In this document: positions 183-390 of the stretch, piece by piece
Position numbering within the stretch: the first letter of the stretch is position 1
Layout of the letters: the number at the start of each line of letters is the position of its first letter
Assembly: GCF_006345805.1 (NCBI RefSeq)
Contig: NW_021825910.1
Coordinates: 1-14,059, forward strand
Length of the DNA: 14,059 nt
Direction of reading: 5' to 3'
Source of the DNA: Octopus sinensis
Taxonomy: Eukaryota
Notes under the pieces: generated by a model
Seen by the model: only the letters and a program-made list of their open reading frames with translations
The model's database searches: none
Told to the model about the DNA's origin: nothing
Made by a program: the position numbers and the translations under genes

Positions 183-390
183 AAAGGGAAAGTTTACGAA
201 AATAAACAAAAGACGAAGGCAGGTGGTGTACAAAACAAACAGATGTATTAGTATAACGCTCAGGAATGGAAAAAGTCTTTTACGTTTCGAGCCTACGCTC
301 TTCTACAGAAAGGGACACAGAAAAAAACAAGGATAGAAAAAAAAATGTGTGTAGTAGCTAACGATCTATCATGGCGTCTGACTCGGACAG
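183..390 (-). mobile_element. Hammerhead-bearing dispersed repeat, copy 1 (Penelope-like terminus or retrozyme-like)
   Basis: Shares AACAAAAGACGAAG and GTATTAGT..ACGCTC.GGAA with 5012-5098. Shares ACGCTCAGGAA and ACGTTTCGAGC..GCTCTTC with 8687-8881. Boundaries are approximate and the PLE assignment is inference. Confidence 0.55.
277..312 (-). ncRNA. Minimal type I hammerhead ribozyme-like motif (HH-1)
   Basis: Minus strand reads CUUU / CUGUAGA+A / GAGC-GUAG-GCUC / GAA / ACGU / A / AAAG. This gives a 4-bp stem I, 4-bp stem II, palindromic stem III and a GUA cleavage triplet (cut between 281 and 280). One core deviation (A6>U) and one extra A. Confidence 0.6.

What the first reader, a model, noticed from the sequence alone, without database searches (positions are those of the whole stretch)
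277..312. Dispersed repeat family carrying a minimal hammerhead with an extra core A and stem I covariation (partner copy at 8778-8812)
Seen: two copies 8.5 kb apart have the same architecture on the minus strand: 4-bp stem I, C(U/C)G(U/A)NGA plus an extra A, GAGC/GCUC stem II, GAA, ACGU, H. Stem I shows a compensatory swap (CUUU:AAAG vs GUUU:AAAC) and the stem II loop varies freely (GUAG vs UCC), while much of the flanking sequence is poorly conserved, which is the pattern expected of selection on RNA structure. Established: Penelope-like elements carry minimal hammerheads whose tiny palindromic stem III works as a dimer, and an extra A between A9 and G10.1 is tolerated in the CChMVd viroid (+) hammerhead. 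Inference: this is a high-copy cephalopod ribozyme-bearing retroelement family (PLE terminus or non-autonomous retrozyme). ACGU has no loop, so cleavage would require two copies. Each genomic copy has one different core mutation (A6U, U4C), so the consensus would be canonical CUGANGA.
Basis: partly seen in the sequence, partly recalled or inferred. Interest (0 to 1): 0.8.

Follow-up and report, generated by a model that had tools for sequence, protein, structure and literature searches.

The report
Decayed Penelope-type minimal hammerheads in octopus repeat
The two sites are real copies of a short octopus repeat that carries the minimal hammerhead ribozyme motif already known from Penelope-like retroelements, but every copy found has a damaged catalytic core, so this is an ordinary, probably inactive, member of a known class.

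Summary
On the minus strand, 312..277 and 8812..8778 both read: 4-bp stem I, C(U/C)G(U/A)NGA, extra A, GAGC/GCUC, GAA, ACGU, H. A descriptor scan found 3 such motifs in 113 kb of octopus DNA and none in 20 shuffles.

The motif is the minimal type-I hammerhead described for Penelope-like elements (Cervera & de la Pena 2014). That paper lists the nucleotide between A9 and G10.1, the G10.1-C11.1 pair, loop-less palindromic 15.2-16.2 and a 4-5 bp helix I as hallmarks. The "extra A" is therefore normal for the class.

It sits in a discrete repeat of about 190 nt that ends at (TA)n microsatellites. I found 10 copies in the window plus O. bimaculoides and O. vulgaris loci, including an inverted pair and an HHR-deleted window copy.

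Two inferences fail:
- The core changes are inherited by subfamilies (A6U in 3/3, U4C in 3/4), so the consensus is not canonical.
- The stem I swap is one cell; the other three subfamily-B copies do not pair there.

No RT or GIY-YIG ORF was found nearby, so the Penelope link rests on motif class and insertion style. Verdict: new member of a known kind, low to moderate interest.

The parts
277..312 (-). Copy 1 minimal hammerhead motif (subfamily A). Stem I CUUU/AAAG, core CUGUAGA (A6U), extra A, stem II GAGC/GCUC with loop GUAG, GAA, ACGU, H17 = A at 281. The predicted 5'-OH end is at 280.
   Evidence: 32.1 bits, E about 2e-7, against model R1 built from non-octopus min-HHRs
203..385 (-). Copy 1 whole repeat unit of about 185 nt: a 57-nt 5' region, the HHR, and a 3' region that ends T-rich and abuts a (TA)n/(TG)n microsatellite at about 119-190.
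   Evidence: nhmmer E = 3.6e-42. Homology with the O. vulgaris copy starts 57 nt upstream of the HHR. Alignment A2.
256..266 (-). Conserved box UUCCUGAGCGU downstream of the cleavage site, copy 1. Function unknown.
   Evidence: 78% identity between subfamilies
8778..8812 (-). Copy 2 minimal hammerhead motif (subfamily B). Stem I GUUU/AAAC, core CCGACGA (U4C), extra A, stem II GAGC/GCUC with loop UCC, GAA, ACGU, H17 = U at 8782. The predicted 5'-OH end is at 8781.
   Evidence: 31.6 bits, E about 3e-7
8711..8886 (-). Copy 2 whole repeat unit, flanked by microsatellites on both sides: a (TGTA)-like repeat at about 8887-8931, and (TA)n then (AC)n at about 8559-8695.
   Evidence: nhmmer E = 1.2e-34; TRF; sequence
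8758..8768 (-). Conserved box UUCCUGAGCGU, copy 2.
5013..5140 (-). Third family copy (subfamily A). The 5' and 3' regions are present, but an internal deletion of about 31 nt removes the hammerhead from G5 to the 3' strand of stem I. Boundaries are approximate.
   Evidence: nhmmer hit 5094-5030; alignment A2

Best explanation
Both sites are old, diverged insertions of a short (about 190 nt) non-autonomous octopus retroelement. Its middle carries a Penelope-type minimal type-I hammerhead (min-HHR).

Inferred mechanism, by analogy with published PLE min-HHRs:
- In a transcript holding two or more copies, the loop-less palindromic ACGU of two motifs pairs to make a shared helix III. This gives a double hammerhead that cuts after H17.
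- The cut would process multimeric or read-through element RNA. The RNA would then be copied back into (TA)n-type microsatellites by a Penelope-like RT/GIY-YIG enzyme supplied in trans.

Shown here: the motif, its homology to min-HHRs of other animals, the repeat unit, its subfamilies and its microsatellite flanks.

Inferred: dimeric cleavage and mobilisation by a PLE.

The window copies themselves are most likely catalytically dead. Each has a substitution in the CUGA U-turn (A6U or U4C). They lie 8.5 kb apart and belong to different subfamilies, so they are not the two pLTRs of one element.
For: - Motif class. The features match those published for PLE min-HHRs: helix I of 4-5 bp, a conserved nucleotide between 9 and 10.1, G10.1-C11.1, and palindromic 15.2-16.2 without loop 3.
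- Homologues elsewhere. A scan of metagenome contigs with the 3' two-thirds of the motif returned 120 loci. Of these, 37 had CTGAN and 27 CCGAN immediately upstream, where chance gives about 0.5 each. They sit on eukaryotic contigs carrying TRIM-NHL, GPCR and bHLH genes.
- Architecture. Across those families the three inner stem I pairs covary: CG 16, GC 5, AU 2. None of 500 shuffles reached the observed score.
- Model search. A covariance model built only from those non-octopus canonical copies finds the two window copies as its top hits (32.1 and 31.6 bits) and five more octopus copies.
- Family structure. There are 10 copies in 113 kb, forming a discrete unit that ends at (TA)n. Three copies lack the hammerhead: two are 5'-truncated and one, in the window, has an internal deletion. 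One pair is head-to-head inverted with a 5'-truncated partner. PLE insertions are described as favouring microsatellites and forming such inverted structures.
- Stem II. One true compensatory change was seen, GAGC/GCUC to GGGC/GCCC, in L123 21660-21626.
- Host context. Penelope elements are abundant in Octopus, with an old expansion at a Jukes-Cantor distance of about 0.2.
Against: - No RT or GIY-YIG ORF was found in the window between or near the copies, in the octopus loci, or beside the metagenome copies.
- No copy with a canonical core was found. A6U and U4C are inherited by subfamilies, although single mutants of the CUGA turn are reported as low-activity.
- The monomer fold is no better than shuffles, with z of -0.6 and -0.4. 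The designed double hammerhead is 5-12 kcal/mol above the dimer minimum free energy.
- The HHR lies mid-unit rather than at the 3' end. That is not what priming on an HHR-cleaved linear monomer would give.
- Helix II is 4 bp, not the 6-8 bp reported for Schistosoma and Drosophila PLEs.
- The octopus sample is small: 7 HHR-bearing copies.
Confidence: 0.7

Rival explanations
1. The non-canonical cores (CCGANGA = U4C; CUGUNGA = A6U) are working variants. In the dimeric min-HHR context, or with host factors, these families still self-cleave, so the window copies could be weakly active ribozymes.
For: - The deviations are inherited by whole subfamilies that nevertheless amplified.
- U4C is also the diagnostic state of a large subfamily on eukaryotic metagenome contigs: 20 CCGAN against 2 CTGAN in one type, and 0 against 19 in the sister type. 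It therefore recurs in two distant hosts.
- U4C creates a CpG, so it is unlikely to arise repeatedly through mutation bias.
Against: [quoted passage not shown]
- Even canonical PLE min-HHRs cleave poorly in vitro.
- PLE clades without any HHR proliferate well, so amplification does not require cleavage.
Confidence: 0.1
2. The family is a metazoan non-LTR retrozyme. A short unit is transcribed from tandem copies, self-cleaved and circularised, and it spreads through circular RNA.
For: - The unit size of about 190 nt is in the retrozyme range. Retrozymes are proposed to derive from PLE pseudo-LTRs.
- One O. bimaculoides locus shows a 3' part, then (TA)n, then a 5' part with the HHR, head to tail (L123 74598-74851).
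Against: - Copies are dispersed singles. TRF finds no tandem array at either site.
- Retrozyme hammerheads are canonical type I, with a helix III stem and palindromic loop and usually loop 1-loop 2 contacts. This motif has none of these.
- Unit boundaries are fixed at microsatellites rather than circularly permuted.
Confidence: 0.12
3. The resemblance to a hammerhead is incidental. The conserved GGCTCGAAAC block would be something else, such as a pol III B-box of a tRNA-derived SINE or a protein-binding site.
For: - GGCTCGAAACG matches the B-box consensus GGTTCGANNCC at 9 of 11 positions in copy 1 (read from the sequence; the consensus is from my own knowledge).
- No Rfam hammerhead model hits either copy, even at E up to 10.
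Against: - ARAGORN finds no tRNA-like gene, and I saw no A-box match by eye in the 5' region.
- The Rfam negative is uninformative, because a canonical-core min-HHR from a metagenome contig is also missed.
- The full 31-nt motif, including CNGANGA, the extra A and ACGU-H, is shared with unrelated families from other animals whose stem I covaries.
Confidence: 0.05

Closest known systems
Minimal hammerheads (min-HHR) of Penelope-like elements (Cervera & de la Pena 2014, PMC4209133; dimer cleavage by Lunse, Weinberg & Breaker 2017, cited in PMC6765202)
   Same: - Type I topology and short helix I.
- An unpaired nucleotide between A9 and G10.1, and a G10.1-C11.1 pair.
- No loop 3, with palindromic ACGU, so a dimer is needed.
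- Many dispersed solo copies with high sequence variability.
- Near-identity of the core and stem II sequence to families on eukaryotic metagenome contigs.
   Different: - Helix II is 4 bp rather than 6-8 bp.
- Every octopus copy seen has a non-canonical CUGA turn.
- No PLE ORF or pseudo-LTR context was demonstrated here.
Metazoan non-LTR retrozymes (Cervera & de la Pena 2020, PMC7229834; Li et al. 2026 preprint 10.64898/2026.07.22.740005)
   Same: A short non-coding, low-GC unit that carries a type I hammerhead. These elements are proposed to be non-autonomous PLE derivatives.
   Different: Retrozymes are tandem arrays with canonical hammerheads that have a helix III hairpin. Here the copies are dispersed and the motif has no helix III hairpin.
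Schistosome Sm-alpha / Sj-alpha SINE-like hammerhead elements
   Same: A SINE-sized dispersed repeat that carries a type I hammerhead.
   Different: Those elements have a pol III promoter and an active canonical hammerhead with a real helix III. Neither feature is present here.
CChMVd (+) hammerhead with extra A10 (De la Pena & Flores 2001, cited in PMC4209133)
   Same: An extra nucleotide between A9 and G10.1.
   Different: That is a viroid type III hammerhead with full helices. It is relevant only as a precedent, and the PLE class itself already has this feature.

Membership tests
PLE-type minimal hammerhead (min-HHR) | Catalytic boxes CUGANGA ... GAAA | tested here: not met
   Copy 1 has CUGUAGA (A6U) and copy 2 has CCGACGA (U4C). 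The GAAA box is intact in both. The deviations are shared by subfamilies. No canonical copy occurs in 113 kb.
PLE-type minimal hammerhead (min-HHR) | [quoted passage not shown] | tested here: met
   An A is present in all 7 octopus copies. The paper lists this as a conserved feature.
PLE-type minimal hammerhead (min-HHR) | G10.1-C11.1 pair closing helix II | tested here: met
   The pair is GC in 6 of 7 copies and GU in 1.
PLE-type minimal hammerhead (min-HHR) | No loop 3; palindromic 15.2-16.2 (helix III only as a dimer) | tested here: met
   Both window copies have ACGU. Two other copies have AUGU, consistent with CpG decay.
PLE-type minimal hammerhead (min-HHR) | Short helix I (4-5 bp) | tested here: inconclusive
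   Both window copies have 4 bp, but the outer pair is unpaired in 3 of 7 family copies. In other families only 3 inner pairs hold, and those covary.
PLE-type minimal hammerhead (min-HHR) | Long helix II (6-8 bp in Schistosoma and Drosophila PLEs) | tested here: not met
   Helix II is 4 bp with a 3-4 nt loop. The metagenome eukaryote families also have 4-5 bp, so this feature varies within the class.
PLE-type minimal hammerhead (min-HHR) | Located in the pseudo-LTR of an element encoding RT plus GIY-YIG endonuclease | tested here: not met
   No RVT or GIY-YIG hit was found in window ORFs (39 protein 10). No long ORF of that kind occurs in L123 or L124. The paper notes that most genomic min-HHRs are solo.
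PLE-type minimal hammerhead (min-HHR) | Mg-dependent self-cleavage after H17 as a dimer | not testable with these tools
   Only thermodynamic predictions were possible. The monomer z-scores are -0.6 and -0.4, and the double-hammerhead fold is above the dimer minimum free energy.
Rfam hammerhead families (release 15) | Covariance-model match | tested here: not met
   No hammerhead hit at E up to 10 in the whole window or in 111-nt slices. In a control, a canonical-core min-HHR is also missed, so the models do not cover this class.
Metazoan non-LTR retrozyme | Head-to-tail tandem arrays of the unit | tested here: not met
   TRF finds no array at either site. Copies are dispersed, with one partial head-to-tail case in L123.
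Metazoan non-LTR retrozyme | Canonical type I hammerhead with a helix III stem plus palindromic loop | tested here: not met
   The motif has loop-less ACGU, compared with the description.
tRNA-derived / Sm-alpha-like SINE | tRNA-like head with pol III A and B boxes | tested here: not met
   ARAGORN finds 0 genes. I found no A-box match in the 57-85 nt 5' region by inspection.

The most novel reading that the evidence does not exclude
U4C (CCGANGA) and A6U (CUGUNGA) would be natural, catalytically competent core variants of the dimeric minimal hammerhead. On this reading they are kept by selection in successfully amplified families of two distant animal lineages, and are not decay products.
Probability: 0.1. 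Interest if true: 0.6.

Novelty: new member of a known kind. Interest (0 to 1): 0.3.

Why it matters
The finding adds octopus to the animals whose genomes carry Penelope-type minimal hammerheads. It also defines a concrete repeat unit of about 190 nt with two subfamilies, which repeat annotators could label; octopus repeat surveys report many unclassified SINEs.

The one point of wider interest is that whole subfamilies spread with a non-canonical CUGA turn, both here and in an unrelated host. This bears on an open question: whether hammerhead cleavage is needed at all for the propagation of Penelope-type elements. Naiad and Chlamys elements do without it.

Tried and rejected
- Rfam over the whole window and over 111-nt slices gave no hammerhead hit. 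The only matches were microsatellite-driven sub-threshold miRNA hits. A control on a canonical-core min-HHR showed Rfam does not detect this class, so I set the negative aside.
- I searched for a Penelope ORF and found none. This covered six-frame ORFs of the window, Pfam on 11 window ORFs and 9 ORFs next to metagenome copies, and long ORFs in L123 and L124. The nearby RT-related sequence at 906-1391 (+) is a LINE 3' end (RVT_1 plus zf-RVT upstream in L121) and is unrelated to the repeat.
- I tried to get more octopus DNA. Look-ups of P0123, P0114 and window ORF 768-1193 were not on record. ENA contigs L122 and L125 come from other animals and hold no family copy.
- The idea that copies 1 and 2 are the two pseudo-LTRs of one decayed PLE is rejected. 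They belong to different subfamilies, each has its own microsatellite flanks, and no ORF remnants lie between them.
- Single-strand and dimer folding did not favour the hammerhead fold. This agrees with the published low in vitro activity and does not decide the question.
- Lunse et al. 2017 (PMC5785218) is not held, and the supplements of the 2014 paper are not held.

Full report
**1. Observation**

On the minus strand, 312..277 reads CUUU-CUGUAGA-A-GAGC-GUAG-GCUC-GAA-ACGU-A-AAAG. On the same strand, 8812..8778 reads GUUU-CCGACGA-A-GAGC-UCC-GCUC-GAA-ACGU-U-AAAC.

The 3' two-thirds of the motif occurs exactly twice in the window and never in 200 shuffles. A descriptor for a loop-less minimal hammerhead required at most 1 core mismatch, a perfect stem II of 4-8 bp closed by G-C, and a palindromic N15.2-N16.2. 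It gives 3 hits in 113 kb of octopus DNA and none in 20 shuffles. The motif is real and non-random.

**2. What surrounds it**

The window is AT-rich non-coding DNA full of microsatellites and SINE-like repeats. Translations of two of those repeats hit Octopus bimaculoides and O. vulgaris proteins. This let me fetch 76 kb of O. bimaculoides (L123) and 20 kb of O. vulgaris (L124).

Profile searches show that the two sites belong to a discrete repeat of about 190 nt:
- a 5' region of 57-85 nt;
- the 35-36 nt hammerhead;
- a 3' region of about 100 nt that ends T-rich and abuts (TA)n or (TG)n.

Ten copies occur in 113 kb.
- Seven carry the hammerhead.
- Two are 5'-truncated and lack it.
- One, in the window at about 5140..5013 (minus strand), has an internal deletion of about 31 nt that removes exactly the hammerhead.
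- One O. bimaculoides locus is a head-to-head inverted pair in which one partner is 5'-truncated.

Conservation between subfamilies is concentrated in two islands. The hammerhead is 69% identical and the box UUCCUGAGCGU, 12-17 nt downstream of the cleavage site, is 78% identical. The rest is 30-50%.

**3.

- Subfamily A comprises window copy 1, L123 74783-74822 and L124 14784-14745. It has CUGU(A/U)GA, that is A6U, in 3 of 3 copies.
- Subfamily B comprises window copy 2, L123 21662-21624, L123 16168-16207 and L123 16084-16047. It has CCGACGA, that is U4C, in 3 of 4 copies, and CCUACGA in the fourth.

The flanks of these copies differ, so they are independent insertions that inherited the change from their source. 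No canonical-core copy was found.

The claimed stem I covariation concerns the outer pair only. That pair is CG in the three A copies, GC in copy 2, and unpaired in the other three B copies. 20 of 500 shuffles do as well. Stem II shows one genuine compensatory change, GAGC/GCUC to GGGC/GCCC.

**4. Comparison with what is known**

Cervera and de la Pena (2014) defined minimal hammerheads in the flanking repeats of Penelope-like elements, massively dispersed in metazoan genomes. The features they describe are:
- a short helix I of 4-5 bp;
- the G10.1-C11.1 pair;
- palindromic 15.2-16.2 without loop 3;
- mostly solo copies;
- activity only as dimers, and low even then (also the review).

The "extra core A" is thus a hallmark of the class and not a special feature.

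Of these, 37 have CTGAN and 27 have CCGAN immediately upstream, where chance would give about 0.5 each. The rest are GC-rich chance matches. The motif-bearing contigs are eukaryotic, with TRIM-NHL, GPCR, bHLH, LINE and DDE transposase genes. I did not identify the host organisms.

At least five sequence families share CUGANGA-A-GAGC...GCUC-GAA-ACGU-H, and their three inner stem I pairs covary (CG 16, GC 5, AU 2; 0 of 500 shuffles reach the score).

A covariance model built only from those canonical non-octopus copies ranks the two window copies first, at 32.1 and 31.6 bits with E about 2-3e-7 in 110 kb. It recovers all seven octopus hammerheads. This test is only partly independent, because the seeds were retrieved with a pattern taken from the window.

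Rfam's hammerhead models hit neither the window copies nor a canonical metagenome copy, so they do not cover this class.

**5. Mechanism**

The best-supported reading is that these are relics of a non-autonomous element of the Penelope sphere.

- Shown: the motif class, the repeat unit, the subfamilies and the insertion next to microsatellites.
- Consistent with PLE biology as described by Craig et al.: microsatellite insertion bias, and inverted structures with a 5'-truncated partner. Penelope elements are abundant in Octopus, with an old expansion.
- Inferred: cleavage as a double hammerhead through ACGU/ACGU pairing of two copies in one transcript, and mobilisation by a PLE enzyme.

Several points argue against present activity.
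- Comprehensive mutagenesis found low activity for all single mutants of the CUGA turn.
- The monomers fold no better than shuffles.
- The window copies are 8.5 kb apart and belong to different subfamilies.

I found no RT or GIY-YIG ORF in the window, in the octopus loci, or next to the metagenome copies. The only RT-related sequence nearby is a LINE 3' end at 906-1391 on the other strand.

**6. What remains odd**

- Non-canonical cores are inherited by whole subfamilies. The same U4C state is diagnostic of a large subfamily on the metagenome eukaryote contigs: 20 to 2 in one type, against 0 to 19 in its sister type. Either cleavage is dispensable for spread, as for the hammerhead-less Naiad and Chlamys PLEs, or the dimeric minimal motif tolerates these changes.
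- The conserved UUCCUGAGCGU box has no assigned role.
- The hammerhead lies mid-unit, which is not what priming on a cleaved linear monomer predicts.

**7. Verdict**

This is a true positive for the motif and the family. It is wrong on the meaning of the extra A, on the expected canonical consensus and on the strength of stem I covariation. It is a new member of a known kind, and the copies in this window are most likely inactive.

Noticed in passing
window 5013-5140 (-): A third copy of the same repeat family (subfamily A). Its hammerhead is removed by an internal deletion of about 31 nt, while the 5' and 3' regions remain.
   Followed up: yes
window 256-266 and 8758-8768 (-): The box UUCCUGAGCGU, 12-17 nt downstream of the cleavage site, is as conserved between subfamilies as the hammerhead itself (78%). 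Its GAGCG could compete with stem II for the GCUC strand. Function unknown.
   Followed up: partly
window 12924-13490 (+); also 1429-1554, 6410-6661, 6911-7037 (+) and 3108-3222, 3370-3483 (-): A 184-bp SINE-like unit is present as a 3.1-copy tandem array and as at least five dispersed copies. Its translation hits O. bimaculoides 'uncharacterized proteins', which suggests the repeat has been annotated as coding sequence.
   Followed up: partly
window 1973-2329 (-): A duplicated repeat whose ORF translation (containing ...SYDRESAALTTGPLRLHG...) hits an O. vulgaris hypothetical protein. It is probably another SINE.
   Followed up: no
window 906-1391 (+): The 3' end of a non-LTR retrotransposon with a conserved C-terminal ORF (about 921-1190). 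It is 94% identical to an ENA metagenome contig (L121), where an RVT_1 plus zf-RVT ORF lies upstream. It has hundreds of homologues in other animals.
   Followed up: partly
window 6182-6387 and 11281-11486: An inverted repeat of 206 nt, 93% complementary, with arms 4.9 kb apart. These are two copies of another dispersed repeat in opposite orientation.
   Followed up: no
window 3591-3854, 4440-4825, 7139-7664, 7768-7915, 8085-8194, 8576-8674, 9686-9833 and others: Long (GT)n, (AT)n, (AC)n and (GTG)n microsatellites. All sub-threshold Rfam 'miRNA' matches (mir-3149, mir-297, mir-1277 and others) fall on them and are artefacts.
   Followed up: yes
L001-L120 (metagenome contigs), e.g. L004 2205-2244 (-), L001 about 205-235 (+): A large min-HHR family, GCU-C(U/C)GACGA-A-GAGC-UAAC-GCUC-GAA-ACGU-C-AGC, on eukaryotic contigs of metagenome assemblies. 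The U4C state tracks one subfamily (20:2) and canonical U4 the other (0:19). The host organism was not identified.
   Followed up: partly
L123 15969-16285: A head-to-head inverted pair of family copies in O. bimaculoides. The plus-strand copy is 5'-truncated about 25 nt upstream of its hammerhead and abuts the 5' end of the minus-strand copy.
   Followed up: partly
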